A stretch of DNA of 64,000 nucleotides from Glycera tridactyla (taxonomy: Eukaryota): the NCBI GenBank assembly GCA_965644265.1, contig OZ286465.1, positions 8,556,001-8,620,000 of the forward strand, written 5' to 3'. Shown piece by piece: positions 26,201 to 60,199 of this stretch. The position numbers and the translations under genes were made by a program. Within the stretch, counting starts at the first letter, position 1. Every line of letters starts with the position of its first letter. The notes beneath the pieces are model-generated. The model was not told the origin of the DNA and made no database searches. It worked only from the letters and a program-made list of their open reading frames with translations.

Positions 26201-29200
26201 TAGAGGACAGTGAGAATAACAACAAGGTGTTTGACACCTGTTTATACAGGAGCTGTAGACATTATTCTGATAAAGATGAAAAAGATTGATGAGTGTGCAA
26301 CTGCTGTTTATCTTGATACTTAAATAGAGTGTGTGATATTGTATTGCGAAGCAGTCATCTAGCAGTGGGAATGAATCATTGCAGGTATACCGCCTCAATA
26401 TTGCTGCTCCCACACAATCCATGCACTGAATGCTACTATTACCACAGATCGCCAACTCATTCACCAGTACTTTTCACAATCACAACACCTTCATTGCATT
26501 TTGCTGATTTGACTTTTTCAAATGCACCTGATTCTCACTATGTGTTCTCATGTCATTGTCTGACATGTAGCATTGGTCTGGTACATTGCATCCACTTATA
26601 TTCACTAATACAGGCTGTTTGAGCACCTAGTTCGGTGTGGAATATATGAATGCTGGGTTACATCAACTTGGGGTCTGAGTCATTTTGAATTATCAGTAAA
26701 ATTGGTTTCATTCTTTGATCAACCGCATTTAGTAGTGACCTCTCAAATTTGTCAAGGATACATTTTGGCCACAGAAAAATATTCAGATTGAACAGTAGCG
26801 TATGGCATAGAATGATCATCAGTATATGCGCCAAGATTCATCCGGGATGCTTTCTGGGTTGAATTGATGCTGGCAAACGCCTGATATCCAAGCATAAAAT
26901 CATACTGCTGCGGGATTGATGAGGGAATGTGAGTTCCGTCGTGAGTGTATGATGACTGTGCTGCAATTGTAAGGTTGTTATTGGAAGTTCCCTGAGATTC
27001 ACACATTTGACTATGCCTCGACTTTTAGTGCCATTCAATTCGCTCTGGACCCATATAGTCTGTATCCTGAAACATAGCAGCCATTGCTCGCCGTTGAGCA
27101 GGTTGGGGAGATCAGTCGACATCTGGTTATTGGCAAGTGATACGTCTGCAGGATATCAGTCATTAAACGAAGGATCGTCCTTGTAGCTGCTACTCTGATG
27201 TTGACTCTGATCTCCTTAAGCAAGCCTCAAATAATCCTGCCTGAGATGAAGCGACGTCGATCAATCAATCAATCAATCAATCAATCCCTCAACAATGCAG
27301 CATGTAGAATTCCAAGGAGGTGTGTCAGGGACTCTGTGAGAACTTGGCCGCTATTCAGTAGCGATTCCTATGAGGAGGGATTGGGCAATTGCTTGATATT
27401 TCGGGGATCCTGAATACAGATCTGTCTGTGAAATGAACAACGAATGAGTATCTTTCATACACTACCATTGTTTGCATCTCACACCTCCATATTTCACTTC
27501 ATTGACAGATGCCACACTACCATCATTTGCATCTCACACCTTCATATTTAGCTTCATTGACAGATGCCACACTACCATTGTTTGCATCTCACACCTCCGT
27601 ATTTCACTTCATTGACAGATGCCACACTACCATCGTTTGCATCTCACACCTTCATATTTAGCTTCATTGACAGATGCCACACTACCATCGTTTGCATCTC
27701 ACGCCTCCATATTTCACTTCATTGACAGATGCCACACTACCATCATTTGCATCTCACACCTCCATATTTCGCTTCATTGACAGATGCCACACTACCATCG
27801 TTTGCATCTCACACCTCCATATTTCGCTTCATTGACAGATGCCACACCACCATCGTTTGCATCTCACACCTGCGTATTTCGCATCATTGACAGATGCCAC
27901 ACTACCATCGTTTGCATCTCAAACCTCCATATTTCGCTTCATTGACAGATGCCACACTACCACCGTTTGCATCTCACACCTCCATATTTCGCTTCATTGA
28001 CAGATGCCACACTACCATCGTTTGCATCTCACACCTCCATGTTTCGCTTCATTGACAGATGCCACACTACCATCGTTTGCATCTCACACCTCCATATTTC
28101 GCTTCATTGACAGATGCCACACTACCATCGTTTGCATCTCACACCTTCATATTTCGCTTCATTGACATATGCCACCATTTCTTGTTTGTTTCCTTCAAAT
28201 CTTTTCGTGAGTGTGGATATTTCGCATATATGAGAGTCTTCGAAGTGAAACATCAATGTGGTGGTCGTTTGCAAGATATGCATGTCAAGCTCAACAGATG
28301 TCTGATTCGCCAAAGTTCTCAAGACCTCCTAATCTCGCAATTCAATCGTAGCATTGGATACGAACAAATTCAATTACTTTCTGGCCTCTGTACAGCCATA
28401 GGACAAATCGAATTCTTGGCATCAATGCAAAATGCTCAGCCTGACAGAAATGTATACAAATGGCTGAACACCTTCTCATTCACTTGATTGATTGTATGCA
28501 TGATTGTGTGGTTGATAGAGATGGCATATATCCAAGATACCGTTATCTATGATTGATAAAATACTTGTGAGACACATTGTGTCTTGACTCTTCTGTTTAT
28601 CACTCGTTCCATATTTATATTTCCTCACATAAGCTCCATGATTCTAGGTCCTTTATAACTACCTTCATGTGCCTGTATGTTCCTTGCTCACTTTGCCCTT
28701 GCCTATGAATGATGAGTGACAAGCTTCAATGGCGCACTCATCAATTTTGAAATGAAAGAAGATTTCCAGCTAGCCTGTTTCTGCGTATCTTATGATTCCA
28801 TTGTTTCTAGTTGTACTGTATTGGATCACTGAATGTTTCGTGAGCGACTGAAAGTAATTCATGTTTGCTCAGAATGTTAGATACAATACATGCAGAGGAG
28901 AAGATGATGATTCCATTTCTTATGTAATTGATGATGTATCACACATATCCAACTGATATATAAATGACAAGCAACTCGATCATAGTAAGATTTTGTGGAA
29001 TGCCACCTTGACCATATCTTTTTACTTTTTCGCGTTATAAGATAGTTGTACTCACCGTGGGACAAGTTGTTTATTGTTCTATTCATCATGATTTGAACTT
29101 CTTATTTTGAGTTGTCAATGATGATTATCCTATTGTTTACAGGAGGATCCTTCTATCCCAACACCATTTTATGAACTAGATGTAAGTCCATTACTTTTTT

Positions 29201-32200
29201 TCTAACTCTAATATGTACCAATATTTCCAAATAATGATGACATGTCTTATTGTGACTCCTTGACCAGTTATCAGGTCAAGTCTGTATAGTAAATCACAGC
29301 CTCTAGGACCACGTAGATGGCGCTAGCTGCCCCTACAGCTTCAACTGTGTAGATTTCTGGTATTTTCCTAGTTGGCTGGAGGCCAAAACAGTGGCCTCGC
29401 GTTCTTTACTTGTACTCGTGCAGCATTGTCAGTGAGCTTCGCTATTCAACCATCATTTTTAGGTTCATCATTCATCAACCAATACAGAGTGACAGAGAAG
29501 AATGGTTATGATCTGCAGTACTCAATTCCACATTGTCTAGGAAAATACTGTTGCCTGCATACATTTCGGATAGCATCATAATCTGTCTCTCAATAATATG
29601 AATGTACTCCGTTGGCTGAATGTACTCAGTATGTGTTAGCATGTAAATAATGATCATTGATATCAGCTATGTGAGCCTCATCAGATTGGTTGTCGGATTG
29701 TTCACATTTTTCCTTTTATAAGGCTGGGTTATATTTAGATGCCCGAACAATGATCATGGACAGGATCATGCAAAGTTCCTCTTGGAAAGTGAGTGTCATT
29801 TCTCACTGAAGGCCACATGGACTGATCACATGCTTACAGCGTGACTGTCGAAAACGTATATAACATGTGTTGTGGAATACAGAATTCAGTTGCAATGACT
29901 GGATCAATCACTGATTCCAATATTCCCTGATATAAGCGGTACTCTATGTTCTTCCTATTGCAGTTACGGAGGCGTATGATTGACAGAGAAACAGATGAGC
30001 TCGTGATGAGAGTCAAACATCACTATGATAATATGGTGGGTATCTTGACAGTTATCATTTTCATTGGTGAAAATTGAAATAGGTGTCATCTTTGAACGGA
30101 TCATCAATATTCGATTGAAACTTTTGATTATTTTTCGAACATTTTATGAATATTTATCGCACATGCCTCACGGAGTGTGCATTCCTGCCACTTAAAATAC
30201 TAGGCATTATCAAAGTGCCGTATGGTCAGTGTCAATCTGTCTAGGTGTTATGCATCATGCATCTAGTCGGGCGTCATGTGTATGAATGCAGAATGCATCT
30301 AGTTCGGTGTCATGCAGCTATAGTATGCTCATTGTATGAATGCATCATGCAGCTATAGTATGTTCAACGTATGAATGCCTCATGCAGCCATAGTATGCTC
30401 ATTGTATGAATGCATCATGCAGCTATAGTATGCATTGTATGAATGCATCATGCAGCTATAGTATGCTCATTGTATGAATGCATCATGCAGCCATAGTATG
30501 CTCATTGTATGAATGCATCATGCAGCTATAGTATGCTCATTGTATGAATGCATCATGCAGCCATAGTATGCTCATTGTATGAATGCATCATGCAGCCATA
30601 GTATGCTCATTGTATGAATGCATCATGCAGCTATAGTATGCTCATTGTATGAATGCATCATGCAGCCATAGTATGCTCATTGTATGAATGCATCATGCAG
30701 CTATAGTATGCTCATTGTATGGATGCATCATGCAGCCATAGTATGCTCATTGTATGAATGCATCATGCAGCTATAGTATGCTCATTGTATGAATGCATCA
30801 TGCAGCCATAGTATGCTCATTGTATGAATGCATCATGCAGCTATAGTATGCTCATTGTATGAATGCATCATGCAGCTATAGTATGCTCATTGTATGAATG
30901 CATCATGCAGCTATAGTATGCTCATTGTATGAATGCATCATGCAGCCATAGTATGCTCATTGTATGAATGCATCATGCAGCTATAGTATGCTCATTGTAT
31001 GGATGCATCATGCAGCCATAGTATGCTCATTGTATGAATGCATCATGCAGCCCTAGTATGCTCATTGTATGAATGCATCATGCAGCTATAGTATGCTCAT
31101 TGTATGAATGCATCATGCAGCTATAGTATGCTCATTGTATGGATGCATCATGCAGCCATAGTATGCTCATTGTATGAATGCATCATGCAGCCATAGTATG
31201 CATTGTATGAATGCATCGTGCAGCTATAGTATGCTCATTGTATGGATGCATCGTGCAGCTATAGTATGCTCATTGTATGAATGCATCATGCAGCTATAGT
31301 ATGCTCATTGTATGAATGCATCGTGCAGCTATAGTATGCTCATTGTATGAATGCATCATGCAGCTATAGTATGCTGATTGTATGAATGCATCATGCAGCC
31401 ATAGTGTGCTCATTGTATGAATGCATCATGCAGCCATAGTATGCTCATTGTATGAATGCATCATGCAGCTATAGTATGTTCAACGTATGAATGCATCATG
31501 CAGCTCGAGTATGTTCAACGTATGAATGCATCATGCATCTATAGTATGCTGATTGTATGAATGCATCATGCAGCTATAGTATGCTCATTGTATGAATGCA
31601 TCATGCAGCTATAGTATGCTCAACGTATGAAATTCATTCTCCAATGTATCAGCAGTTGTACTGAAAATAATATGCAGTGATACATACATGATGAATATAT
31701 ATTACAATTTTTTTTCTCTCACAGAAACGAGTGGCAATACATGAGAATCACTACTTCTTCACGGAACTCTCTGGTACACCATTCAGGTATGTATCATCGA
31801 GTGTAACTGAAGATGCTGGGGTTAGTTGATATCCTGCATTGTATTCACAAGTCATGTTAGCAGATGATGGCATGGGGACTGCACCATAGGCTGTATGCGC
31901 ATTCAGCACAAATTTATACTTCCATTTCGGAGACTAGTTTCTGGCCAACCTAGATAATGTGCATATATAATGCATGTCCACCATCTGATGTGGTATGATG
32001 AGTGATCTATGCATCCCAGCATATGCCATCATTGAGATCTCACCCATTGCTATCAGGCTTGAGTGTTGGCTTCCAGTCAGTTACATAGTCAGATATGCCA
32101 TAATTAGATTCAGTATGTTCGAGAAGAGTAGGTGGAGGTGTGTCTGAACTGGTAGCTACTTCCACTTGACAACCTTTCAGGTTCCCGATCATCTTGTGCT

Positions 32201-44040: not shown

Positions 44041-47000
44041 GAAAGGAGAAGCAACTGTTGCTAGTCTCAAATTAGTGCCCATTTCACTTATTCAGCTGCT
44101 CGAGGAGATCAGATGATTGCATAATATTGCAATAACTCATCGTTCAATGCCTGATCAAATTGACTCTCTCCATATTCCTTTTTCACACTTTGACTCAGTT
44201 GAGGAAGAAAACGACTTCAGAATCTTCCACCTGGAAGTATATATGAGTGTAATCATCGAGTGAAATACTCATTCCATATTTTGAATTATTGTAGATGTTC
44301 AGTATTCTGAAGGTAAGACAACCTCCCCCCCCCCCCCCCCCCCCCCGCAGCGACTGAGAACAAGGCCATAGACATGAGGGACCAATTAGGAAGCCAGACC
44401 AAGAGAGACATATCCCAACATGAGAATGCATGATGAAACATCAAGGAAGTGTATACGCAGTGATTGATTCTGGGATGGTCAACCTAACTTTGATTACCTT
44501 TCAGTTTCAGCAACATGGATGCGCCTGGATATGTCATTCACTTTGGTGTGTTTTTGAAATCATACATTCGGTGCAAGGGCAAACCTCTCCGTTCTTTTCC
44601 TAATGGTTAGAAGAGTGTCATGATTGGAAGCATAAAGAATGATACAACAGGGATTCTGCTTCTTAATAACCTCATTCCTCATTCTTCATTTATTTATTAT
44701 CTTCCGGTATGGGATACATTTTCTTTCTGTCCTGGTTATGGCATCGAAGAGAAAACCGTAGTGATGTACAAGTGTATGGTGTGAGTGAATGGCTCGGCTG
44801 TGGCAGGTGTCATGTGCAGTGTAGTTTATGCATATATTCTAAGCTGTAATTCTTTCTAACCTGGATAATCCCTTGGCCTCTTGAGTACGTCGACAGATCT
44901 GGATCTTCATGAGATATCAATTGACTAGGTCAAGCAGAATTTATGTGACAGCTTGGCTGTCATGTCAGCAATGCTGTGTTTTTATTTGAATCCTTTCCAT
45001 TGAGAACTAAGCTCGAAAGGTGAATCTCATGGACCTGTATCAATCAGGAAACAGAGTGATGATCAGTCACCTCTCAGAATCCACATGGAACAGAGTGATG
45101 ATCAGTCACCTCTCAGAATCCACATGGAACAGATCTCCCTTTTTTAGGTAAAAACATAGTCTATGTTTGTGGTGGTTGGTAAGTGCATCTTATTTCTATG
45201 TTTCATCGTAGAGTATTGGTGCTGGGATACAACTTTTGCTTCCTCTCTTTTCAGTGCTCATATGGAATATTCAGATCTGTTGATGTTACTAGAATGACTC
45301 CTGCTCCACAGAGCACCATGTTGGTATAGCAAGACTACATGGCCGTGAAGTGAAATCGCAATACCAAACAAGGCGTGAATTTCAATGGAAGTCACGAGGC
45401 CGAGTGACATCTGGAGAAATTTACGCTGAGTTTGGTATTGTGTTTTTACCTCACGGTCATATAGTCTTGCTTTTATCACATTGATTAGGGGAGAAATCAT
45501 AAGAAAATAGTTCTCACTCAGCTGTGAAGTATCACATGCAATACTCAACACCTGATACTTCACTGAAAATGGCATATCCATGGGATAATATGGATAGTGT
45601 GAGATGCCATGATGCATTCAGTGGCATCCAGTGACTTTTGATGTATTATTTTGTTTTGCTGTCTCGAATATGTTGCCAGAATCACCATCGTTAGTATTTT
45701 ATTTTCGCTGCCTCGAGATAAGGATTTGCTTAATACAAGCGTCAGTTTGGCCACAGGGTATGTGGCAAGTTTTGTCTGGCAATATGATATTGATGCAGTG
45801 ATAGTCTTCGAGTGCAGGAGTTGCGCCGGCAAGATGAGCTGAATTAAATTTTTATCTTCCTTTGTTTTCAGTGTCAGGAGAAGGGCGGCAACCGCCAGAG
45901 CCATCAGAATTAGTGATCACAGCCAGTTCTCCCATCATCATCTCGGAAGAAGGCCGTGAAGCAGTAGCTGGTGTTGTTGGACTCCAGATGCGTTATGACA
46001 AATTTTATGAGCTTTTTGTGAACAGTACAAAAATATGTCACTCAAAGAAGAATGAGCCCTGCAACATGACTTGTGAAAATTCAGTAAGCATGCGTTCAAT
46101 ATCCAACAGAAAAATGATAATTCCAAAACGTTTGACTGGAATATTCAAAGTGATGCTTCAGCTGTTACGTTTGATAAATGAGTTTCTTTGCCAATGTAGG
46201 CAATCAGTGGTTTCGTACTTGAAATCTGGTGCTGACATGCATTTGTTCTTACAGTGGCCAGAGAAATCTATGTATTGATTCATGAATGAACCCTCTTCAA
46301 CCGACCTAACAATCTGTGATGGAGAGACCACACATTGCCATCACAATCATTTCACCAACAACAACACAGCACTACAGTCACCAATTCACCACCCATCACC
46401 ACCATCAATACCACGGCCGCCCACCACCAACACTATCATCGCTTTATCTCACCACAACCACCTTCATCACCATCCCCCCACTGTTTCACCATCATCATCA
46501 TTTCACCATGACTACCATTGACATGTGGTCGCCGACAGTCGAATAACACCACCACCACCACCATCACCACCACCACCACTACTACCACCAGTTTTTGGGA
46601 GGATGGATAATTTCTCATTAGCCCATCCATGATATTATTTCCCTCTTTTTCCAGGCTCTCGACTGCTATCTCATTGACAACAATGGGTTCATAGTCCTAT
46701 CAAAAACATCTGGAGAGGTAGGTTAGGTCGCAATATTTCTTGGAATCTACATATTCTTATCATGAGATATCTGTTAAAATCTTATTTCCTTTCTCCGCAA
46801 ACACTGCATGTACTTTAAGACCATGTTTTTTCCAAGAAAACCAGCTGATATATTGTATAATACAGATTAAAGCATGAACTTCCCGTGTATGCTTGTAATT
46901 TCTCAAGCGAGAATGTAACTAATTATTTCTGATTAGTCCATGCAATCTCAGTCTATTCATATTCATAGCATCTGATGCCCTCCCTTGTGAGCATATTTGC

Positions 47001-50000
47001 AGCACCTAGCATCAATCAAGGACATTCAAGATAAAAGCACATTTCATTCTCAGCCAAATGAAGGCTGTTATATATTAGTAGAGGAAGTAGCAGAGACACT
47101 CACCAGGTGGTGGATAGTCAAGGAGTATTCCAAAACCGTGCCTTCTTTAATGAGTTCACTGCCAAATGCAATGGTTCTTGGTCACGAGGTCCTCTTGATG
47201 GGAAGAATCATTTGACAGCAGTACTCTCACCATATGATAGGATAATTCGGCGGCCTTGGTCCCTGTACGAAGTGGTTCCTGTTTTCAAGATGTGGGTAGC
47301 CTCGGCCACATCGTGGCTAATTGTCTCAATGTTGTGTGAGTGTTGGAGGGGCCCAGTGTCGTTTTGGATGTGCTGCATGAAAGATTTCCTTGAATAATTT
47401 CAGGACAAAACTCAAGTACTTATATTATTGGTGTTGATTTCTGTTTGAATTACTGTGCTTTGTTTGGTTCAGGATCATTGGTATCAGATCTTAATGTTTG
47501 CTTTCGGACATTCAAGCAGTTGAACATGACACCAAGAGGTTCATCAATCATCTGTTAGACCTCTAATGGTCAATCCTTTCTGAACATATAGTACAAGAGT
47601 CGTTCCTCGGGTGAATGCATTCACCCTATGCATAATGCTGAGACTCGTAGCTGATCTGAATTTTGTTTGATCCATGAAATGTATATTTTATTCATTTAGA
47701 TTGGCAGATTTTTCGGTGATATTGATGCCACCTTGATGCGAAAACTGATCCAGTACGAGGACTCTGAGGATTCAGGGAATATCAAAGGTGTCTTCAAACG
47801 GTGAGTGTCATGGATATTTGCCGGCACCTGCTGATTGTAGCAAAATATCATTTCTTTAAACCTGCTCCACTGAAATTTCAGCTTGTATTTTTGAAGTCTG
47901 GTGTCTTGAAATTGATTGATATTCCAAACAATTCACGAAATAATGTTTCCGGAATGATGGCGACAGCTTTGAGGATACTATTTAACTGCGAAACTTTGGG
48001 ACTTTGGGATGTGCATATGTCCTCTAGTCACTCGGGAATGTTCAGTTCAAAGTCACTTCAGTCCATGGTCAGCCAATGAGATGACTGAAATTCCTTTGTT
48101 TGGATATACAATCTGGTTTGATTGTCATTGACTCCTCTTTCACCACTTTACCAGTTTGTTTGGGGCAGTGAAAATGTCTACCTGTGGATCATGTGTGTAA
48201 CCAAGATTCATATATTTTTCCAGAGTTCAGATGTATGACTATCAAGGCATGTGCGAGATATGGGTACGCGGGATATCTGGCGCCAACTCACTCTTCATTG
48301 ATGTAAGTATAAAAATTGATATATAGATAGACATATGGGCAGAGGGGTAAGAGAGTGGGAGCAGGGCTGTACTTATTGTAGTCACTCAGCCATTTCTCTT
48401 CTTATGTGAATGCTGAGATTGAGATGCTTTTCCTGTGAAATCAGAAAACTTCCTTACGTATTTCTGTATCTGAATCTCAGTGAATTCTATGACATCATTC
48501 GGATTTGGATGAAATGAGATGTGGTATTCACTTTTTGCCTTCACTCTGTGATGGATCCATGAGCAATTTTTTAAAATTTGAAATTGGATTTGAGGGATGG
48601 TGGATCGATTATTATGTATAGTAATGGGTGAGATGGCATTGTATCCCTGATGAGAAATGAACATTCAGTCTCATCGCGTTGTTTGGCTCGGAAGCTAGTG
48701 AGGGCCAAGCTAATCAGATTGCATTCAGATTGCATCTCATCATTTCTTCAGTCTATTACCTGTCAGGCAGTATTCTGTGGTATCCATGTGGCTTCAATAG
48801 GTAATGCAATGATTCTGTTTTGTGTGATCTGTTTGTCTTGTAGAAGTAAAATTCATTTTTGTTCTATTGCAGCCATTGCGCAAGTTATTCTCTTCTCTAT
48901 CATGGTTGATCCAAGAAGTTGCATTGTGAGTATAATTTTCAGAACAATCTATTTTTATAAAAAGAATCATGACAGGGGGTATTGGTGGTCAGCCCGAGAG
49001 AGTCAATGAGCTGTGGGAGTTTGATTTCAGATGATTCATGATTCATCCTTGGACCAGCTCTTCTTTCTGGCATTTGGAAATCTTGCAGCTGTCAAAAATA
49101 GTTTTCAAGTTTCCGGGTACTCCATAATTTGTCCTGTTCCATTGAAGGAGATGATATGCCTTGTTACCATCCACAATCGGCTCAATTATCTCACTTGAAT
49201 CATCTATCTTTTCAATCTTCTGGTAACTGATGAGGCTGAAAGAGCTCTCGAACTTGGAATCTAGGTAAAGAAATCATTTGTCTCTGTCATATGGATTGCC
49301 TTCAGGAGCATGCAACCTAGGTTATGGTGGGTGTGCCATTACTAGTGGCAGTTACAAACAAAACCACTGTCTCAAGTATCACCGCTGCCAGCAATTAATC
49401 TACTTTGCTTTGTCTTACAATGACTGCCTGTGTGCGTGCGTGTGTGTGGGGGGGGGGGGGGGATGGATATGTGTGTGTTTGCGTGTGCGTGTGTTTGAGG
49501 AATACTGCTCAATAATTGACAGCAATTTTGGGGAAATATGAAAGGAATGCACTTTAAGTCTACATATATTTTCTGATGTATGATATGCATGGTTTTTTTT
49601 CGCTTGCCAGATTTTTGGTTCACTTCAACTTGATGAGTTGGTGGAATGGAGAATATACAACAGTCCTAGGTATGTATGTGCTTATTATCCTGCATCCAAT
49701 AATGAGACCAATCACATTGTCATTTCTCCCAATGAAACATTTGCTGAATCCTCGCTTTCAGTTTCTTGAGATTGATTGTTATTCTGTTCTTTATTTTTGA
49801 TGGCAAGCTACACAATGCTGTCTATAATACCAGTATGATCATAACTGTCCTGATTTCGAAAGACTAAAAATGATGTATACAAGAAGTCATCACAGAGTGG
49901 CAGAGGAATGAATATGTGGTGGCATTTTTCACATGTTTTTGTTCCCTCTATCCCCAAAATAATATTGAACCAATCTCACTGTGTCTCACTTTGTTCAAAA

Positions 50001-53000: not shown

Positions 53001-56000
53001 ATATTTCAAATCTTCACATCTGAATTGACAACCTATGTTCATTCTTATTCAAGCTCATATCTGGACTGAATACATTTATTCAATGAGTATTGTGAATAAC
53101 TTAAAACTATCCTGGAGAATGAATGTAGTATAAAGTGTCTTTTTTATACGTCCGATGCATACTATATCTCCATTCCTGTGGTTACTTTGATGTGTATCAA
53201 TCTGCAGTTTATGTTGTAGTTGATTGCGTGTTGTACCACATGTTGTCACATTCTGTGCATCTTCTGTCTGCCATATCACCTGGTGGATGAACATCAATTT
53301 ACAGGCAACTCTCACAGTCATCAATCTGTCTTCGCATCTCATATATTCTCTGATGATTCTTCACACATTGTTTCCATACTCACCTCACTGTGAATCATGT
53401 CTCTTCTGGTATTGTCTTACTCGAATCAGCTGATTGAAGATGTTATTCTTGGTTACTTTCTAATGTTGTTGCTTTTTGTGATGATACATCATCTGTCTGT
53501 TTCCTTCTCATGGACAAGGTCTGGTTGAGGAGCCCCTGTCTCTATCATCTCATGTCACTGTGCAGCTGCATTCTCATCTTTCTCGTGTCAAGCGTCCAGA
53601 TGGCAAGCCTTCAATTCAGTTGCATGTCCATTTTCGACAATTATCTACTGCGATATCTATCCTTTTTTTCTATCATATTTTGAGAAACAAGAAATGTTGA
53701 TGGGCCCCGGACTCGAAGCAGTGACATTTTTAATGCATCTGTACAGTTCACCAAAGATTAAGATTTGCTCCTGCCCTACATTTAGATTGATCATTTTTAC
53801 ACCCGTATTTTATTGATTTTGTTATCATTCATTGAAGGAGGTCACACACCAAGCATATCCTTCCAATTGAATACCAACACATGACTAAATATATAGAAAA
53901 AGTGATGGATAATAGTGGAGATGGAGGAGAAATAAGCAAAGTGAGGTCATACACATATACAAATGATGACATGACGGGGAAATCCGGGTACTTCATACCA
54001 ACTGATGGAAGTCATTAACATTTTCATGTTAGATACAGGTCGTATCTCACAACATTATAGCTATTTGAATCAAAATGAAATAAATATCAAATTGAGATAG
54101 TGAAGGTGATAGTGAGGCTGAATATGCGAAGGATGTAAAATGTTCCACTCTATCTGACTGGGAGATGAATACTTGTCGATAAGTTCAAGCAGGCTCTTAT
54201 TAGTTGAATGTTATTTAAAGCCCAACTACTATCAATCCAGGATGTATGCAACAGGGCAGGGGAATTCACTTGCTCGCACGTGAGACAACATAAACTATGT
54301 GTTCTTTATGAATTAAGAGCAGTTCAAAGAAATATACTTCTTCGAAGCGCTTAAATTTATCTATAATACCAAGTGACATCGCTTCACTTTTGGATCTATT
54401 GAGAGTATGTCTGTTATGTCATACACTGTTCTCCAATTTCAACATATCCGATACTAAGATATTATCAGTAGTTGATCGCTTGAAACATATTTGACGAACC
54501 ATCGGCAAACATATGGACTATGAAGTGCTCCAAGGATCCTACCAGGTCATTCATGTACAGAGGAAAGAAGGAACAGCCAAGTATGTGACTCTGGACCACT
54601 TTATTCAATATAATCAATCACAATGAGTACGATACTACTGGGAGGTGATCTATTGATCCTTCAAGCCTGTCAGGCTCAGGAACACCTCCCCACTACACAT
54701 GCCCTCATCCGCTGCTCTGTATATTGTCACGTCGAAATTGATGATGACGTGAAAATCGTGTAATGCTCCCTGATATCTGGCTGGCGATCGGAGAGGATGT
54801 GCTCCCTGACAGCGACTATGTGTAACCTGCCCTGAGGGTTTACCGAAGGTTGGAGAACAGTGATTGTAGGATTCACCTCAGCATCATATATCAAGAGCTT
54901 CATAACAGGGACCAAAATAAAACCTAGTACACAACATGGCAAACTGGTAATTAGAGATTGTACCACAAAGAAGCAAGATCCTTTCACTGATAACAACGAA
55001 ATCCTACCCTGATCTAACTGTCATTTCATCACCCATATCCACAAGGAAGTACCTTCTCGCTTGATGATTCTGTCTACGAGACATTAATTTGACATTGTTG
55101 ATGACGTTGGACAGGGAGGTATTATCTAATATGGGTGTTGATAACAAGTGTAGGCCTACAGCGGCAGCATCTACACTTACAAAGGAATAAGTGTCATTAC
55201 CAAAGTGGGACTGACCTAATCGATTCCCAGCATATATTCTTTCAAGCATACTTTCTTTCAACATTAGTCTAATATCTTACAGGACACACTTTTAATATTT
55301 TGAACATCTCAGTGAAATGTGCTCAATTGGACCTTTGAAGTAATGAGAGGGTCATGTCAAACGCCATCCAAATGGCAGCAGATGTATGATAATGTCATCT
55401 AGATATGAGGGTGGGTAGAGCTGAGGCGGGCCTTTGTTGTATGTAGCGCCATGGACAGCTCTCTGCAGCAGATGTATGATAATGTCATCTAAATATGAGT
55501 CTAGGTAGAGCTGAGGTGGGCCTGTGTTGTATGAAGCGCCATGGACAGCTCTCTACAGCAGAAGTATGATAATGTCATCTAAATATGAGGCTAGGTAGAG
55601 CTGAGGTGGGCCTGTGTTGTATGTAGTGCCATGGACAGCTCTCTGCAGCAGATGTATGATAATGTCATCTAAATATGAGGCTAGGTAGAGCTGAGGTGGG
55701 CCTTTGTTGTATGTAGCGCCATGAACAGCTCTCTGCAGCAGATGTATGATAATGTCATCTAAATATGAGGCTAGGTAGAGCTGGGGTGGGCCTGTGTTGT
55801 ATGTAGTGCCATGGACAGCTCTCTGCAGCAGATGTATGATAATGTCATCTAAATATGAGGCTAGGTAGAGCTGAGGTGGGCCTTTGTTGTATGTAGCGCC
55901 ATGAACAGCTCTCTGCAGCAGATCAGTTAGCATTTGTGGTCTAGTTCATGCTTGCCATGCCAAGCTAAGCATGCAGTTAAGCCTGCAAGATGGCGCTCAG

Positions 56001-58878
56001 CGCCTTGGTCCATCCAAAAACATGTCCGGATATCAGTATATAGAGCACTAGATATTACAGAACCGATCAAATGATTAACCAAGGGCGTTTCTGTATGCTT
56101 CTGCAATATTTTTCCCCTATGGTGTGCGTGTGATGAAAGGAAAATAAGGTGATACTCTCCTGAAGTATACGAGATGGGATTCCTTTCTAGATTGTGAATG
56201 TGCTTCCATTTCTGAAACGTGATGGTCTGATTTTCGGGAAATGTATCAGGAATTCTGTTTGACCCTTGTGATTGGTGATGATTTTGAATGTAATCTCTCT
56301 TGGTATTCAGTATAGTGCGCATGTTGACTTCCTTTTAGGGCAATTTGGATCTTGTTGAATTTGCTATACTTGGGATTTTCAGGCTTATGGTAGTGATGGT
56401 ATGGAGCTAGGAAGGTACAAATTTGCAAAACGGTCACCTGCATCCCACCTTTCCTCGTTACTTTGGTCACTAGTAGTATCAGCGTGACCTTCTGGCTCTC
56501 AGCCTCTGTTCCATCCCATGGTCCGCGATCATCAAAATTTTATTACCTCGATAAGCTTTCTGTTCACACATAATCCATGTGGTTTCCATGTTCGTTGTCA
56601 CGCACATGAACAATATGCCGAATTCACAAGTCTTTTGGATATTTATGTCGATGATCAGCTCATATGTGACATTCTGACTTCCGATGACTTTGGCTCAGTG
56701 CCAAGCCAGGTTTGAATGCACTCTAATGTAAGTTGTTCATACCTGGAATGACATGTTCTTGATCATCAAAATCATTCAGGAGTGGGGTTTTGAGATCAGC
56801 AAACCTGAGAAACATCACGGTAACGACTTTCATCAAGCTTGGCACCTTGAAATATTCTCCTCAATCCATGTGAAAAACTAGTCATCTTACGTAGGTCAGA
56901 TGATTGTTTTCCATTGTGTGGTACTGCCATATGGGACCTCTCGACAATAGAAGGCATCAACTGATGGTTGTGAAGTGGCGGGATCTTCAAAACATAGTAG
57001 TAGCATGCTCCCTCCTCACTGGAGCATTAGTGATCAGTAGAGAAATGACCACATATTGTATAATGGTCTGCAGTCTCACTTAGCATCTCATAAAACTTGA
57101 ATACTGAGCCAGCACCTTCTCACAAGTTGCACTAGTGTAACTAACTTTAGTATGCGAGATTAACTTTTCAAATAGAAATGGTAAGTCACACGCACATAGA
57201 GGAAACTACATGGTGAACTTAAATCCCTGGAGTATATGGTTCTTATATGAGGCCCCATTCCATTTTATTGTGGATATCACAATATTCTACGTGCCATACA
57301 CATCCAATCACAGCATGTTCCATACAGAATAAACTCAACTAGATGGGAAATGTCTCATTGAATAGACTACTCCCTCCCTATCCATCAGGTTGACTGTGTC
57401 TGTACTATGCTTCCATATCTCACTCAGTATCTTGGTCATGATTCACCTAACCACATGTTTTGCACCAATCAGGGGAGAATAATGAGACTATCATCCGATA
57501 CATTGAAGACATGGAGGAAAATGTCAATCTGCCGCATGCACAGGAGGAAGGCCACATCCCAATGGGACAAGCACACACTGAGGAAACACTACAAGAAACA
57601 GAAGAAGAACCATTTTGGCCAGACTTCACCAGTCTACTGGACTTTGCAAATTCTGCACAAGTGCTAGATTGGTTCCAAGAATACCGTCAGATGAAGGGTC
57701 TTGGCCAATCAGATGAGGACATCAAAAGGTGGTTCCACAGCTTGCGTCGTATATATGGCCCACAAATGGTTGGTTATGCAAAATGTTCAAAGGAGTACAA
57801 CCTTTACACTACTGGAAATCAACAGCTCCCATTTCATGGCACTGACATAAGCTGCCCGGATTCTCCATGCCAGAAGTAAGTATTCACCAGAGCAGTGTGT
57901 GACAGTGAGTCAGAGATCTCCCACCCCCTGTAACATCGATGTAGTTCTGAGAGGGCATTGATTGCTATGCTTTGGTCTGCCAATTATGCATCTTGGACAA
58001 AGTGGTTGATGAATTGTTGGATCGTTCCTAGTCTGGCCTCCTTCGGTGTTGGTTTTCTGTAGGCATCTGTTCGATATTGCCAGATATATTCCACCTGCTG
58101 TTTGTCTGCCCTTTGTCTCTGCATCCTTGGGTGAACTATGGTCACTCTTGTCTTCCTAAAGGGATTTCATGCATGTCTGCCCTTAAGCGTGAATTATTGC
58201 CACAAACCTATTATTATTTCACCATCCATACGAATACAAGGAGAGGGAAGCCACTTATACGGCATTATTTTCATTCACATCGATGAACTTTTTTTTTCCA
58301 TTTGCCACATTCTCTATTATTTTGCTTATAGATGACTTGGCTGCTGTGACATATTTGTTGCCTCATTAGCAGTGCATCATTCTCGTGCCTGTTCGTTTCA
58401 CGTCAGTTCTTCATTTGCACTTATCTACAAACTTGAATGAAGTCAGCATTAATTTCTGCCTACCGTATAGCAGGGAGTACCGATGTACGTGTCCTTCCAG
58501 CTATTGCCACCTTTGTCATTTGTACTTCACAGGCAATGAGAGTTTTACTTCTGCACCTCCTGTTTATGAGCCAGCCGCTGAATCAAATGAGCCCCAGGAT
58601 TACTGGGTCCCGGACTTAGACGTCCTTGCAGAACTTGCTGAAAAAACTGATGATCCTGACCAGTTGCGGCGCTGGCTAAATGAGTGGAGAGAAATGAGCT
58701 CATCTGGGAGTTCGAATGAAGAAATGATCTTATGGTATGAAGATATAAAGAAGCTTTATGGACCACGGGTCGTTGGATATGAGGGATGCATAAGGGAATT
58801 TGCTAGTTTTATCAGTGATCCAACTAGTCCTCCCCAAAATGGTGTCATCGACAAGGGTTGCATATCAGACTGCATTAG
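414..58878 (+). CDS. CACNA2D3: Voltage-dependent calcium channel subunit alpha-2/delta (alpha2delta-3/4-like), multi-exon, partial at both ends
   Basis: Hand-spliced exons give one ORF with hallmark motifs: [131 protein letters not shown]. All introns GT-AG with matching phases. Family is certain; the paralog label is by resemblance only. Confidence 0.95.
1200..3200 (-). mobile_element. Possible highly decayed LINE RT remnant
   Basis: Minus-strand [14 protein letters not shown] near 1490-1530 resembles GV.QG..L.P.LF; remainder unrecognisable, bounds approximate. Confidence 0.25.
5204..5233 (+). CDS. Candidate 30-nt symmetric microexon [10 protein letters not shown]
   Basis: ctatag acceptor after a T-rich tract, gtaagc donor, stop-free in phase 0 inside a phase-0 intron; no homology support. 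Confidence 0.3.
8046..8925. repeat. Minisatellite, 42-bp unit x ~21
   Basis: Unit atggcatggatggctgtcaaacatgctgctgaatgataatat, near-perfect copies. Confidence 0.98.
9611..9635. repeat. (GT)n microsatellite next to an assembly gap
   Basis: Direct reading. Confidence 0.95.
10561..10809 (+). CDS. Candidate cassette exon, 83 aa acidic/Pro-rich (KYLDPHLL...[13 protein letters not shown]), phase 0-0
   Basis: Strong acceptor tatttccttgttattttcag and donor acg/gtaagc; 249 nt, stop-free, same phase as the flanking exons; two N-glycosylation sequons (NIS, NET). Confidence 0.7.
13278..13293 (-). promoter_or_regulatory. CTCF-like motif GCCACTAGATGGCGTC
   Basis: Close match to the CTCF core consensus CCACYAGRKGGCR; motif match only. 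Confidence 0.35.
15862..16743 (+). mobile_element. Non-LTR retrotransposon RT fragment, RTE/RTEX-like, inactivated
   Basis: [26 protein letters not shown] (FADD-type motif altered), [26 protein letters not shown]; in-frame TAA at 16401-16403; bounded by N-gaps on both sides. Confidence 0.9.
20229..20282. repeat. (CA)n microsatellite next to an assembly gap
   Basis: Direct reading. Confidence 0.95.
22655..22711 (+). CDS. CACNA2D3: alpha2delta exon: [19 protein letters not shown]
   Basis: ctttctag / gtgagt; matches the LMTTVAMPVF motif. Confidence 0.93.
23377..23457 (+). CDS. CACNA2D3: alpha2delta exon: [27 protein letters not shown]
   Basis: tttttag / gtaagg; Cache-domain LLGVxGTDVP motif. 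Confidence 0.95.
23903..23977 (+). CDS. CACNA2D3: alpha2delta exon: [25 protein letters not shown]
   Basis: cacacag / gtgagt; highly conserved [13 protein letters not shown] motif. Confidence 0.97.
24472..24546 (+). CDS. CACNA2D3: alpha2delta exon: [25 protein letters not shown]
   Basis: ttttccag / gtgaga; [13 protein letters not shown] motif of the alpha2delta-3/4 group. Confidence 0.93.
25360..26029 (+). mobile_element. Non-autonomous Helitron/HINE-like element with internal ~145-bp tandem repeats
   Basis: GGGT-rich microsatellite (~25376-25410), degenerate ~145-bp units (agggc[t/c]agcc at 25441, 25586, 25731), 10-bp inverted repeat ATGCACTCAG/CTGAGTGCAT (25988-26024) followed directly by CTAG-T; 5' end approximate. 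Confidence 0.55.
27459..28177. repeat. Minisatellite, 55-bp unit x ~13
   Basis: Unit cacactaccatcgtttgcatctcacacctccatatttcgcttcattgacagatgc. Confidence 0.97.
29143..29181 (+). CDS. CACNA2D3: 39-nt symmetric exon [13 protein letters not shown]
   Basis: tgtttacag / gtaagt; phase 0-0, stop-free; not needed for frame and not recognisable in vertebrate paralogs. Confidence 0.65.
29964..30035 (+). CDS. CACNA2D3: alpha2delta exon: [24 protein letters not shown]
   Basis: cctattgcag / gtgggt; matches LR..MI.RET. Confidence 0.92.
30311..31631. repeat. Minisatellite, 35-bp unit x ~38
   Basis: Unit gcagc[t/c]atagtatgctcattgtatgaatgcatcat. Confidence 0.98.
31725..31786 (+). CDS. CACNA2D3: alpha2delta exon: [20 protein letters not shown](S)
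   Basis: tctctcacag / gtatgt; phase 0-2; KRV...YYYT.I.GTPFS motif. Confidence 0.93.
32913..32986 (+). CDS. CACNA2D3: alpha2delta exon: [24 protein letters not shown]
   Basis: ttatccag / gtgagt; phase 2-1. Confidence 0.92.
33530..33572 (+). CDS. CACNA2D3: alpha2delta exon: (K)[13 protein letters not shown](W)
   Basis: tatctccag / gtgagt; phase 1-2; ends LAEW. Confidence 0.88.
34484..34593 (+). CDS. CACNA2D3: alpha2delta exon: [36 protein letters not shown]
   Basis: ttctgcag / gtaagt; phase 2-1; W.YCN motif. Confidence 0.9.
35244..35358 (+). CDS. CACNA2D3: alpha2delta exon: (C)[37 protein letters not shown]
   Basis: ttttgcag / gtaggt; phase 1-2; CD.EL...LLFDA motif. Confidence 0.92.
39950..40850 (+). 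mobile_element. Possible decayed L2/CR1-type RT remnant
   Basis: ASAFNSV (AFD.V-like) followed by [12 protein letters not shown] (YADDT-like) in the expected order. Confidence 0.25.
42786..42866 (+). CDS. CACNA2D3: alpha2delta exon: [26 protein letters not shown](P)
   Basis: ttattccag / gtaagt; phase 2-2; GV..AF.GTR.GL.R-like motif. Confidence 0.9.
43725..43825 (+). CDS. CACNA2D3: alpha2delta exon: [33 protein letters not shown]
   Basis: tttttttccag / gtaagt; phase 2-1; YYRRAVE motif. Confidence 0.93.
43956..44035. repeat. (GA)n microsatellite, ~40 units
   Basis: Direct reading. Confidence 0.97.
45051..45133. repeat. Perfect 39-bp tandem duplication
   Basis: acagagtgatgatcagtcacctctcagaatccacatgga x2. 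Confidence 0.9.
45872..46083 (+). CDS. CACNA2D3: alpha2delta exon: [22 protein letters not shown]...[15 protein letters not shown]...[16 protein letters not shown]
   Basis: ttgttttcag (second in-frame AG 6 nt downstream) / gtaagc; phase 1-0. Confidence 0.92.
46320..46590. repeat. Degenerate (CCA/CAT)n low-complexity tract
   Basis: caccaccaccaccatcaccaccaccaccactactaccacc and decayed flank, intronic. Confidence 0.8.
46655..46717 (+). CDS. CACNA2D3: alpha2delta exon: [21 protein letters not shown]
   Basis: ctttttccag / gtaggt; CYLIDNNGF motif. Confidence 0.96.
47700..47800 (+). CDS. CACNA2D3: alpha2delta exon: [33 protein letters not shown](R)
   Basis: ttcatttag / gtgagt; phase 0-2; G.FFG.ID..LM..L motif. 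Confidence 0.93.
48224..48302 (+). CDS. CACNA2D3: alpha2delta exon: [26 protein letters not shown]
   Basis: tttttccag / gtaagt; phase 2-0; YDYQ.MC motif. Confidence 0.94.
48873..48925 (+). CDS. CACNA2D3: alpha2delta exon: [17 protein letters not shown](L)
   Basis: tctattgcag / gtgagt; phase 0-2; corresponds to P...FL...KW...EL.L. Confidence 0.88.
49611..49669 (+). CDS. CACNA2D3: alpha2delta exon: [19 protein letters not shown](G), end of alpha2
   Basis: cgcttgccag / gtatgt; phase 2-1; matches the alpha2delta-3-type FLVEFNLCSWW. Confidence 0.92.
52150..52900 (-). mobile_element. Decayed non-LTR retrotransposon RT remnant
   Basis: Minus-strand YAVILETKL and [21 protein letters not shown] resemble RT motifs (IL..RL; GVRQGCPLSP.LFN); many stops and frameshifts. 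Confidence 0.45.
54650..56500 (-). mobile_element. Decayed RTE-like RT remnant interrupted by the 90-bp minisatellite
   Basis: Collinear minus-strand fragments: [14 protein letters not shown]...[26 protein letters not shown]...QGRL, in the order expected for RTE RT. Confidence 0.4.
55375..55923. repeat. Minisatellite, 90-bp unit x ~6
   Basis: Unit start recurs every 90 nt (55375, 55465, ... 55915); 30-aa periodicity in the minus-strand ORF. Confidence 0.97.
57473..57875 (+). CDS. CACNA2D3: alpha2/delta junction exon, variant A (GENNETII...FWPDF...[15 protein letters not shown]...[10 protein letters not shown]), phase 1-2
   Basis: caatcag acceptor, gtaagt donor, 403 nt stop-free; 3' part has the C-x2-E-[YF]...C..C-x-[KR] pattern of the delta N-terminal exon. 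Confidence 0.85.
58533..58878 (+). CDS. CACNA2D3: alpha2/delta junction exon, variant B (GNESFTS...YWVPD...[15 protein letters not shown]...KGCISDCIR), phase 1-2
   Basis: tacttcacag acceptor, gttagt donor, 346 nt stop-free; paralogous to variant A (16/43 identities, ungapped core). Confidence 0.85.
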
Positions 58879-60199
58879 GTTAGTATATATATATGGATGT
58901 ATACATATATACTTGGTGTTAACCGAAAATATATTGGTTTTCATAACAAGAAGGGTGTTCTTATTCAGTGTGATTTGTAGAATATGTCCATGTCAGCCTA
59001 CAATGGAACATTGCATGAAGTTCCTTGAATGCCCACTAAGTCACATTGTCCTATTTCCCTGGTGGTATCCCTCTAGAGGCAGTAATCTCCCTGATATGAC
59101 TGAATCAAGTGATTCATTGAAGATCGGATCAAATTTTTTGAAAGGCCTTTTCCAGGAATAGAGTTGTCAATGTCGCCTCTGGTGCATATCACTGACCATG
59201 AAAGACCAGTATTTTAATCTAATCTCTGATTCTTTTATGCTTACACATATGACTCTTTCTATCGAGCTTGGTCTTGCAGTCATCTTCATCATTGCAATTA
59301 CTCTGCTACACTTTTCGTACTATGCAGAGGTGCAGTGAGTCTAGCTGGAATTTATTCTGGATATTCATTCAGAATTTATTAGATCGTTAGATTGTTGCAG
59401 TACAAGTTTGTATACCTCGACTAACCTGTATGGAAACAACCAGGTACCCGCCCAGAATTTCTCGTCATTGCAATTCAAGGGCTAGAATCAATTACTCAGA
59501 TATTAGTGATGACAATGTCAATTCAATGGATGCATCATCAGATGATGTATGCAATGGTCAGTTCAGCAATCAGCAATCCAACTTCACGACTCGGACTTCG
59601 TCTTTGTTTTAATGCATGAAAGAGGTTCCTATGCAGTATCTATGGGACGTTTACACATATGCGGTTGTGAGAGGAGCCTGGGTGGCGGTTGCTAATAATA
59701 TGGAACTGTTCCTGCCAAACATCGAGCTGCTGCAGCTGATAAGCTGCCTCATTAACTCTGCAGCCAGACTCGCTGCCTCAAGGTTCTTGAGAGACTCCAA
59801 ATACTTGTGTCAGTTGTATTAACTGCCTCTCTGCTGCATCAATGCCATCATGTTGCAGCCTCGGCATCTGATCGCTATTGCCCCCAATGCCTAAGAGAAC
59901 TCAGCCAGATTGCAGGCCTATACTGGACTTGCGGCCCAGTCCTGATGCAGTGGTGGTCATTGTGAAACAAGCAATGTCATCGTTGTCATCCTCTTCACTT
60001 CGGTCCTTGTTGCCGCCGCTGCTGTCACCATGATTGTCGTCATAAGAACCGCTACCACCAACACAAGCACCGTCATCTCAAGATGAGTTGCGGTCCATTT
60101 TGCTTGACTCGCCTGATTCGGCAATATAACAGATAGTTGAATACGAATGTGAACATGTTTCTAGATGTAGATGACATGCTGAATGGAGAGGACATGGAC

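What the first reader, a model, noticed from the sequence alone, without database searches (positions are those of the whole stretch)
57670..58801. Unrecognised Trp-rich helical module inserted at the start of the delta subunit
Seen: A 57670-57798 [43 protein letters not shown] aligns without gaps to B 58673-58801 [43 protein letters not shown]. Each is preceded by an aromatic-W-(V)PD motif and a diverged acidic leader. Known: in vertebrate alpha2delta only a short, largely unstructured linker lies before the first delta Cys. Inference: amphipathic spacing and retention of W, G and YGP in both copies suggest a folded helix-turn-helix extracellular mini-domain new to the family, attached at the cleavage site, which could shield the site or act as an isoform-specific binding module.
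Basis: partly seen in the sequence, partly recalled or inferred. Interest (0 to 1): 0.8.

Follow-up and report, generated by a model that had tools for sequence, protein, structure and literature searches.

The report
Alternative three-helix module in alpha2delta
An invertebrate calcium-channel helper gene (alpha2delta) has two either/or exons that each add a small, confidently folded three-helix domain where the protein is normally cut in two; this domain is missing from the vertebrate protein and from domain databases but is kept in many unannotated animal genomes.

Summary
The two 43-residue stretches are 37% identical without gaps. They lie in two homologous exons on the + strand, A (57473-57875) and B (58533-58878), with BLASTP E 2e-16.

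Both exons have AG/GT sites and the same phase. Each length is 1 mod 3, and joining A to B stops after two codons, so only one can be used per mRNA. No RNA run was listed to confirm this.

The gene is an alpha2delta. One Cache exon hits solved alpha2delta-1 chains. Successive exons hit only Pfam VGCC_alpha2, in collinear order.

AlphaFold2 with a 70-sequence alignment predicts the same three-helix bundle in both copies (pLDDT above 90 in the helices). It is followed by a conserved YGP-x3-G-x3-C tail with three cysteines.

No Pfam family, solved alpha2delta chain or annotated protein among 1.84 billion representatives carries the module. The flanking exons anchor to 108 positions of the family profile, but 200-219 residues lie there, so 90-110 are extra.

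The module is not private. 68 sequence clusters from unannotated animal contigs have it, and five relatives' contigs carry three tandem copies that are orthologous by position.

Its function and the cleavage site are untested. The scan already noted this same stretch as an exclusive exon pair.

The parts
57473..57875 (+). Alternative exon A, 403 nt (1 mod 3). It encodes an N-glycosylation sequon (NET), an acidic leader, the three-helix module and a tail with three cysteines.
   Evidence: AG acceptor and GTAAGT donor. The reading frame stays open when spliced to the upstream exons. Its closest relative is P0001, 61% identical.
57625..57756 (+). Three-helix bundle of copy A. Helices lie at 57625-57642, 57652-57699 and 57712-57756.
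   Evidence: AlphaFold2 model m993f6489dea6, with pLDDT 93-98 over the first 50 residues.
57757..57873 (+). Tail of copy A: [11 protein letters not shown] and two further cysteines. Cysteine codons are at 57784, 57853 and 57868.
   Evidence: These are conserved columns of the 70-sequence alignment: Y/H-G-P, G, C (69 of 70), L-P, G, C, C.
57876..58532 (+). Intron between the two alternative exons, 657 nt.
   Evidence: Bounded by the donor of A and the acceptor of B. No convincing docking/selector RNA pairing was found.
58533..58878 (+). Alternative exon B, 346 nt (1 mod 3). It encodes an NES sequon, a shorter acidic leader, the three-helix module and a tail with three cysteines.
   Evidence: AG acceptor and GTTAGT donor. 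The frame is open when spliced to the upstream exons. Reading A then B stops after two codons of B. Its closest relative is P0002, 61-63% identical.
58616..58759 (+). Three-helix bundle of copy B. Helices lie at 58616-58645, 58661-58702 and 58715-58759.
   Evidence: AlphaFold2 model meb0bbf9fbd81, with pLDDT 90-98 over the first 60 residues.
46655..46717 (+). Constitutive upstream exon ([21 protein letters not shown]).
   Evidence: Conserved in L002 and L003. Its only Pfam hit is VGCC_alpha2, positions 204-223.
47700..47800 (+). Constitutive upstream exon ([18 protein letters not shown]...).
   Evidence: Conserved in L002 and L003. Its only Pfam hit is VGCC_alpha2, positions 229-246.
48224..48302 (+). 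Constitutive upstream exon ([26 protein letters not shown]).
   Evidence: 73-77% identical to L002 and L003. Splice sites and phase were checked.
48873..48925 (+). Constitutive 53-nt exon ([17 protein letters not shown]).
   Evidence: Found by comparison with L003. It resolves the phase between its neighbours.
49611..49669 (+). Constitutive 59-nt exon ([19 protein letters not shown]), the last exon before A or B.
   Evidence: Conserved in L002 and L003. It ends with one spare base that A or B completes to Gly.

Best explanation
[quoted passage not shown] Each exon encodes four parts in order: an N-glycosylation sequon, an acidic and probably flexible leader, a compact three-helix bundle, and a tail. 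The bundle is built around conserved Trp, Leu and Ile residues. The tail reads YGP-x3-G-x3-C and carries three cysteines that begin the cysteine-rich delta-like part.

Each mRNA can carry only one of the exons. The gene therefore makes two isoforms that differ in an extracellular helical domain at the junction of the alpha2-like and delta-like parts. Relatives would make three isoforms.

Compared with the vertebrate protein and the Pfam family model, the leader plus bundle are about 90-110 extra residues.

Shown here: homology of the two exons, splice sites and phases, the frame rule, conservation across genomes, the fold prediction, the absence of any database match, and the excess length.

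Inferred: that the choice is regulated, and that the bundle is a surface module that tunes partner binding or the proteolytic maturation of alpha2delta. In mammals that maturation step gates channel activation (PMC5092059).
For: Homology of A and B.

Splicing: all sites are canonical, both exons have the same phase, each length is 1 mod 3, the chain stays open with A or with B, and A+B gives a stop after two codons of B.

Gene identity:
- A Cache exon hits 13 alpha2delta-1 PDB sequences as its best matches, E 0.004.
- VGCC_alpha2 is the sole Pfam hit of three successive exons, in collinear order, and of a downstream exon in a relative.

Fold: two AlphaFold2 models with pLDDT above 90 over three helices.

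Conservation:
- 68 clusters share the motif set.
- Five relatives' contigs each hold three tandem copies.
- Copies at the same array position are 43-75% identical across contigs, against 18-33% between positions within a contig. Position-3 copies form one clade, support 99/84.
- Donor phase is the same in the relatives' copies whose donor was listed.

Extra relative to the family: 108 profile positions span 200-219 residues. No Pfam family is shared by the 70 members. No alpha2delta chain appears in the PDB sequence or fold searches.
Against: There is no transcript evidence, because no RNA run was listed. Exclusive use therefore rests on the frame rule and on conservation.

The exon after A/B lies beyond the window, so the full delta part of this gene was not seen. 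It was seen only in relatives.

The residue-by-residue comparison with human alpha2delta-1 around the cut site is from my memory of that sequence. Profile searches of the tail and of a flanking exon did not reach the PDB chains.

The unrestricted search used only a two-sequence profile, so diverged copies in annotated orthologues could have been missed.

The AlphaFold2 models cover the isolated exon, not the whole protein.
Confidence: 0.75

Rival explanations
1. The module is not new to the family. Described invertebrate alpha2delta proteins (insect, nematode, mollusc) already contain it, and the searches here simply could not see them.
For: The word-based protein search only sees proteins of 0.55-1.75 times the query length. 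The unrestricted search used a two-sequence profile with a detection limit near 35 bits. The module occurs in many genomes, so some annotated proteome could hold a diverged copy.
Against: The unrestricted library does hold annotated eukaryotic proteins from NCBI and UniRef: one hit is a Buddleja WIYLD protein. Yet no hit longer than 280 residues is an alpha2delta. The Pfam alpha2delta model has no room for the module. No paper on such an exon array at this position was found.
Confidence: 0.25
2. One of the two exons is a decaying, unused duplicate (a pseudo-exon), and the gene makes one isoform only.
For: There is no RNA evidence. This genome has two copies where five relatives' contigs have three, so copies can be lost.
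Against: Both copies keep open frames, canonical splice sites and most of the strongly conserved positions: both core Trp, Y-G-P, G and all three cysteines. Copy A has Tyr for one moderately conserved Trp, and copy B has lost two conserved Leu. Each has its own closest relative at about 61% identity in another genome, P0001 for A and P0002 for B.
Confidence: 0.1
3. The helices do not form an independent domain. They are amphipathic segments that fold only against the alpha2 body or another protein, and AlphaFold2 over-packs them in isolation.
For: Only the isolated exon was modelled. Fold matches are generic three-helix bundles and designed proteins with Z of 5.8 or less. pTM is about 0.6.
Against: pLDDT is 90-98 in all three helices of both copies, and all five models agree. 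The conserved columns are the hydrophobic and aromatic ones expected of a core: L11, W27, I44, W47.
Confidence: 0.15
4. Both exons are used in series, giving a tandem double module.
For: They are adjacent and on the same strand.
Against: 403 + 346 nt shifts the frame, and the A-to-B junction reads K-Q-stop.
Confidence: 0.03

Closest known systems
Vertebrate alpha2delta-1 (CACNA2D1), alpha2/delta junction
   Same: The exon order and motifs before the junction are shared. A Cache exon matches PDB alpha2delta-1. Collinear VGCC_alpha2 hits run on both sides of the junction. From my memory of the human sequence, the tail pattern C-x6-[YF]-x2-D-x7-G-x-[LIV]-x-C-x2-4-C matches the first cysteines of delta. 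The hydrophobic Trp-rich stretch before the cut corresponds to exons 48873-48925 and 49611-49669.
   Different: The mammalian protein is cut at LEA//VEM (PMC5092059). From memory, only about 16 residues then precede the first delta cysteine. Here 86 residues (B) or 103 residues (A) lie there, including a folded bundle. No solved chain matches the module. Mammalian alternative splicing of this gene is, to my knowledge, by cassette exons elsewhere and not by an exclusive array at this point.
Mutually exclusive exon clusters from tandem exon duplication (e.g. Cav and Nav alpha subunits, Dscam; reviews PMC9013439, PMC6071210)
   Same: The exons are tandem and homologous, of similar size and equal phase. 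The frame is lost if two are included. The copies are orthologous across species.
   Different: No competing RNA structure was found. Here the array replaces a whole small domain plus a disulfide-bearing segment of an extracellular subunit. No report for alpha2delta was found in the held library.
WIYLD domain (Pfam PF10440), a ubiquitin-binding three-helix bundle of plant SUVR proteins
   Same: The two-copy profile scored 11 repeats of a Buddleja WIYLD protein. Both have a 'helix, G-x-S-x-E-[DE] turn, helix ending in L-Y' pattern.
   Different: hhalign probability is only 22% over 34 columns. None of the 70 members hits PF10440. WIYLD is nuclear and plant-specific. This is a look-alike, not a relative.
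Unannotated repeat protein P0055 (Logan contig), possibly from a phage, with 11 repeats 'EFGSL..EQ...G.[ST].EEI..W[LI]R'
   Same: It has a local helix-turn-helix pattern with the same G-x-[ST]-x-E-E-I-x-x-W signature. hhalign probability is 64% over 26 columns.
   Different: It is a short partial match with no cysteine tail, in a different context. Its repeats have no Pfam family.

Membership tests
alpha2delta (voltage-gated calcium channel auxiliary subunit) | Double Cache domains | tested here: met
   The ORF piece 23858-24022 has 13 alpha2delta-1 PDB sequences as its best matches (E 0.004, residues 506-530). It also has a weak dCache_1 hit.
alpha2delta (voltage-gated calcium channel auxiliary subunit) | VGCC_alpha2 region (Pfam PF08473) after the Cache domains | tested here: met
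   Each exon alone scores below the 22-bit cut-off. However, PF08473 is the only family hit, and the hits are collinear: profile positions 119-200, 204-223 and 229-246, then 355-383 in a relative's downstream exon.
alpha2delta (voltage-gated calcium channel auxiliary subunit) | VWA domain with MIDAS motif | not testable with these tools
   No MIDAS-like motif occurs in any + strand ORF piece of the window. These exons must lie upstream of the window.
alpha2delta (voltage-gated calcium channel auxiliary subunit) | Cysteine-rich delta part with a C-terminal membrane anchor, and proteolytic cut into alpha2 and delta | tested here: inconclusive
   The first three cysteines lie in exons A and B. 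Further delta-like exons were seen only in relatives L003, L005 and L006. The anchor and the cut were not observed.
Mutually exclusive exon cluster | Tandem homologous exons with equal phase | tested here: met
   BLASTP E 2e-16. Both exons start with two bases that complete a codon and end with two spare bases. Relatives have the same donor phase.
Mutually exclusive exon cluster | Including two exons (or none) destroys the frame | tested here: met
   Both lengths are 1 mod 3, and A+B reads K-Q-stop.
Mutually exclusive exon cluster | Transcripts carry exactly one member | not testable with these tools
   No RNA run was listed for this stretch.
Mutually exclusive exon cluster | Each member is conserved as its own orthologue in other species | tested here: met
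   Identity at the same array position is 43-75%, against 18-33% between positions. Position-3 copies form a clade with support 99/84.
WIYLD domain (PF10440) | Significant profile match to the family | tested here: not met
   hhalign probability is 22%. None of the 70 members hits PF10440 at E of 0.01 or better.
Three-helix bundle fold (generic) | Three packed helices in a compact unit | tested here: met
   Two AlphaFold2 models show it. The best structural neighbours are designed or natural three-helix bundles: Z 4.4-5.8, rmsd mostly 2-4 A over about 40-60 residues. This is a shape class, not a family.

The most novel reading that the evidence does not exclude
The module is an undescribed extracellular domain family specific to the alpha2delta subunits of one large invertebrate group. 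Earlier notes of this scan suggest annelid-like animals and their kin. Exon duplication diversified it into a conserved array of two to three either/or versions. The chosen version would set how, or whether, the pro-protein is cut into alpha2 and delta. The cut could fall in the acidic leader, leaving the bundle as the N-terminus of delta. Alternatively it could fall at the frequently basic pair just after helix 3, leaving the bundle as the C-terminus of alpha2. Splicing would then control the maturation step that switches calcium channels on.
Probability: 0.2. Interest if true: 0.75.

Novelty: new variant of a known kind. Interest (0 to 1): 0.55.

Why it matters
Alpha2delta subunits control the trafficking and activation of Cav1 and Cav2 channels, and they are the target of gabapentinoid drugs. 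In mammals, the cut between alpha2 and delta is a checkpoint for channel activation (PMC5092059).

A folded, alternatively spliced domain placed at that junction would give invertebrates a way to make functionally distinct alpha2delta isoforms from one gene. No vertebrate equivalent was found here. The junction region has been treated as a linker, and this finding offers a natural handle for studying what it does.

It also adds a small, well-conserved domain with no entry in Pfam or the PDB.

Tried and rejected
1. I first thought the module might be the positional counterpart of the vertebrate hydrophobic Trp-rich stretch before the cut site (from memory...GWWATAAAW...). This is rejected. That stretch corresponds to the separate exons 48873-48925 and 49611-49669, found by comparison with L002 and L003.

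2. A 43-nt candidate exon at 59401-59443 after B has no support in relatives. Their next exons have no counterpart in the last 5 kb of the window, so the next exon lies beyond the window.

3. A third array member was sought in the window and none was found.

4. WIYLD membership is rejected.

5. Docking/selector RNA pairing around the array: only short, weak inverted repeats were found.

6. PDB sequence searches gave no alpha2delta hit. Queries were each exon, the 70-sequence profile, a tail-only profile and profiles of two flanking exons. Foldseek against the PDB, the ESM Atlas by shape and by features, and VIA-align gave only generic helical matches.

7. The word-based protein search with a 263-residue first row returned 5 short unnamed fragments.

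8. The source organisms of the relatives' contigs could not be named. Their accession numbers occur in no held paper, and Rfam found nothing in the window.

9. A text search for the human peptide strings, meant to verify my remembered sequence, found nothing.


Full report
**Observation.** They are the cores of a longer homology. The two whole exon translations give BLASTP E 2e-16 over 93 residues, and MAFFT finds 34 identical columns. The FWPD / YWVPD motifs and the acidic leaders are present. At the DNA level the copies are barely alignable, so the duplication is old.

**Anatomy of the two exons.**
- Exon A is 57473-57875 (403 nt), with an AG acceptor and a GTAAGT donor.
- Exon B is 58533-58878 (346 nt), with an AG acceptor and a GTTAGT donor.
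- Both begin with two bases that complete a codon and end with two spare bases, so both lengths are 1 mod 3.

**Upstream exons.** By comparison with relatives' contigs I placed the upstream exons at 46655-46717, 47700-47800, 48224-48302, 48873-48925 and 49611-49669. All have canonical splice sites. The spliced chain is open through A or through B, whereas A followed by B reads K-Q-stop. The pair can therefore be used only one at a time. No RNA run was listed, so this rests on the frame rule and on conservation. The intron between A and B is 657 nt. I saw no convincing competing RNA structure.

**Gene identity.**
- The ORF piece 23858-24022 has 13 alpha2delta-1 PDB sequences as its best matches (E 0.004, [25 protein letters not shown]).
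- Pfam VGCC_alpha2 (PF08473) is the only family hit by three successive exons, and the hits are collinear. They cover profile positions 119-200 (the relative's copy of the exon within 45838-46275), 204-223 and 229-246.
- A downstream exon of relative L003 hits positions 355-383.
- The VWA/MIDAS exons are not in the window.
- The exon after A/B lies beyond the window end. Relatives show it as FRSYSIHRV..TNLMLLA, followed by a C-x-C...C exon.

**The module is a fold.** AlphaFold2 with a 70-row alignment gives a three-helix bundle in both copies.
- For B: mean pLDDT 86, with 90-98 over the first 60 residues and helices at residues 8-17, 23-36 and 41-55.
- For A: mean pLDDT 85, with helices at residues 7-12, 16-31 and 36-50.

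So it is three helices, not a helix-turn-helix. The most conserved columns are:
- in the bundle: L11, W27, E30, R32, I44, W47;
- in the tail: Y/H55-G56-P57, G61, C65 (69 of 70), L79-P80, G83, C88, C93.

This fits a hydrophobic core followed by a disulfide-bearing tail. Each exon also starts with an N-x-S/T sequon, as expected for an extracellular glycoprotein.

**No known domain matches.**
- No Pfam family matches either exon, and none is shared by the 70 members.
- No solved alpha2delta chain is reached by sequence profile or by shape.
- The nearest shapes are generic or designed three-helix bundles with Z of 5.8 or less.
- The ESM Atlas gives nothing usable.
- Two long proteins scored by the first profile are look-alikes only. 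One is a Buddleja WIYLD protein, with hhalign probability 22%. The other is an unannotated repeat protein, possibly from a phage, with probability 64% over 26 columns.

**The module is extra relative to the family.** The flanking exons anchor to PF08473 positions 246 and 355, which leaves 108 profile positions between them. The protein has about 219 residues there with exon A and about 200 with exon B. The excess of 90-110 residues equals the acidic leader plus the bundle.

From my memory of human alpha2delta-1 (not verified by a tool; one search found no text copy), about 111 residues span the same anchors. Only about 16 residues separate the LEA//VEM cut (PMC5092059) from the first delta cysteine. 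Here that interval is 103 residues in A and 86 in B. The tail pattern after that cysteine also fits the human delta start.

My earlier idea was that the module is the counterpart of the vertebrate hydrophobic Trp-rich stretch. It is rejected, because that stretch corresponds to exons 48873-48925 and 49611-49669.

**The module is not private.**
- An unrestricted HMMER search of 1.84 billion representatives with the two-copy profile found 70 proteins. Of these, 68 are short ORF calls on single exons of animal contigs in metagenome, Logan and unannotated NCBI assemblies.
- All five relatives' contigs long enough to judge (L002-L006) carry three tandem copies in the same order.
- Copies at the same array position are 43-75% identical across contigs, against 18-33% between positions within a contig. 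Position-3 copies form one clade with support 99/84. Exon A groups with the position-1 copy of L004, support 97/90.
- The array is therefore older than these species, and each member is kept under its own constraint. This genome has two members, and no third was found.

**Is it new to alpha2delta?** As far as I could test, yes. The library searched does contain annotated eukaryotic proteins, yet no full-length alpha2delta was hit. No annotated protein of 145-460 residues was found with the 70-row profile either. I found no paper on such an array at this position. The caveats are the weak two-sequence profile in the unrestricted search and my inability to query full-length orthologues directly. 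I give 25% to the rival that described orthologues already contain it.

**How it likely works.** One exon is chosen per mRNA. The product is an alpha2delta whose junction carries version A or version B of a glycosylated acidic linker and a small helical domain, directly ahead of the first cysteines of the delta-like part. Core positions are conserved and most other positions differ between versions (27% overall identity). I therefore infer isoform-specific surface properties that affect partner binding or access of the processing protease.

The cut site is unknown. Besides the leader, a frequently basic pair just after helix 3 is a candidate (K/R in 69% and 56% of sequences). This is inference only.

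**Verdict.** The module is a conserved, undescribed addition to alpha2delta, delivered by an either/or exon array. Function, cleavage and expression are open. Earlier notes of this scan marked the same stretch as an exclusive exon pair (s1-329789) and suggest an annelid-like animal (s1-325529). I did not test the taxon.

Noticed in passing
window:57481-57522: The start of exon A ([14 protein letters not shown]) weakly resembles helix 3 of the module ([13 protein letters not shown]), as if part of the unit had been duplicated again inside the leader. The same second match appears in relative P0001/L001.
   Followed up: partly
window:40454-40579: An intronic + strand ORF piece ([42 protein letters not shown]) weakly resembles position-3 module copies of relatives (tblastn E 0.002). 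It lies far upstream of the array. It is probably chance, or possibly a decayed copy.
   Followed up: no
window:57739-57744 and 58742-58747: A basic pair (RR in A, KK in B) sits just after helix 3 and before YGP. The two columns are K/R in 69% and 56% of the 70 sequences, and one relative reads RKKRQ. It could be a convertase-type cut site or simply helix surface.
   Followed up: partly
window:10495-10827: An open + strand stretch rich in Pro and acidic residues lies upstream of the Cache exon at 23858-24022. Another note of this scan calls it a cassette exon. It has no Pfam hit.
   Followed up: no
window:8046-8925, 27459-28175, 30310-31631, 55375-55923, 25413-25773: Five intronic minisatellites were found by Tandem Repeats Finder: 42 nt x 21, 55 nt x 13, 35 nt x 38, 90 nt x 6 and 145 nt x 2.5.
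   Followed up: no
window:16404-16991: An open frame that looks to me (from memory, not searched) like the C-terminal end of a LINE reverse transcriptase (…[12 protein letters not shown]…) lies next to N-masked stretches. It is probably a retrotransposon remnant in an intron.
   Followed up: no
L003:17313-17504 and 18159-18302; L005:6567-7253; L006:13633-14137: The relatives' contigs show the next two exons after the array: FRSYSIHRV..TNLMLLA, then a C-x-C...C...YR.RP..C exon. The first hits VGCC_alpha2 positions 355-383. No counterpart exists in the last 5 kb of the window.
   Followed up: partly
P0055 (Logan contig, 1108 aa): This protein may come from a phage. It has a coiled-coil head and 11 tandem repeats of about 50 residues (EFGSL..EQ...G.[ST].EEI..W[LI]R). 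The repeats match no Pfam family.
   Followed up: partly
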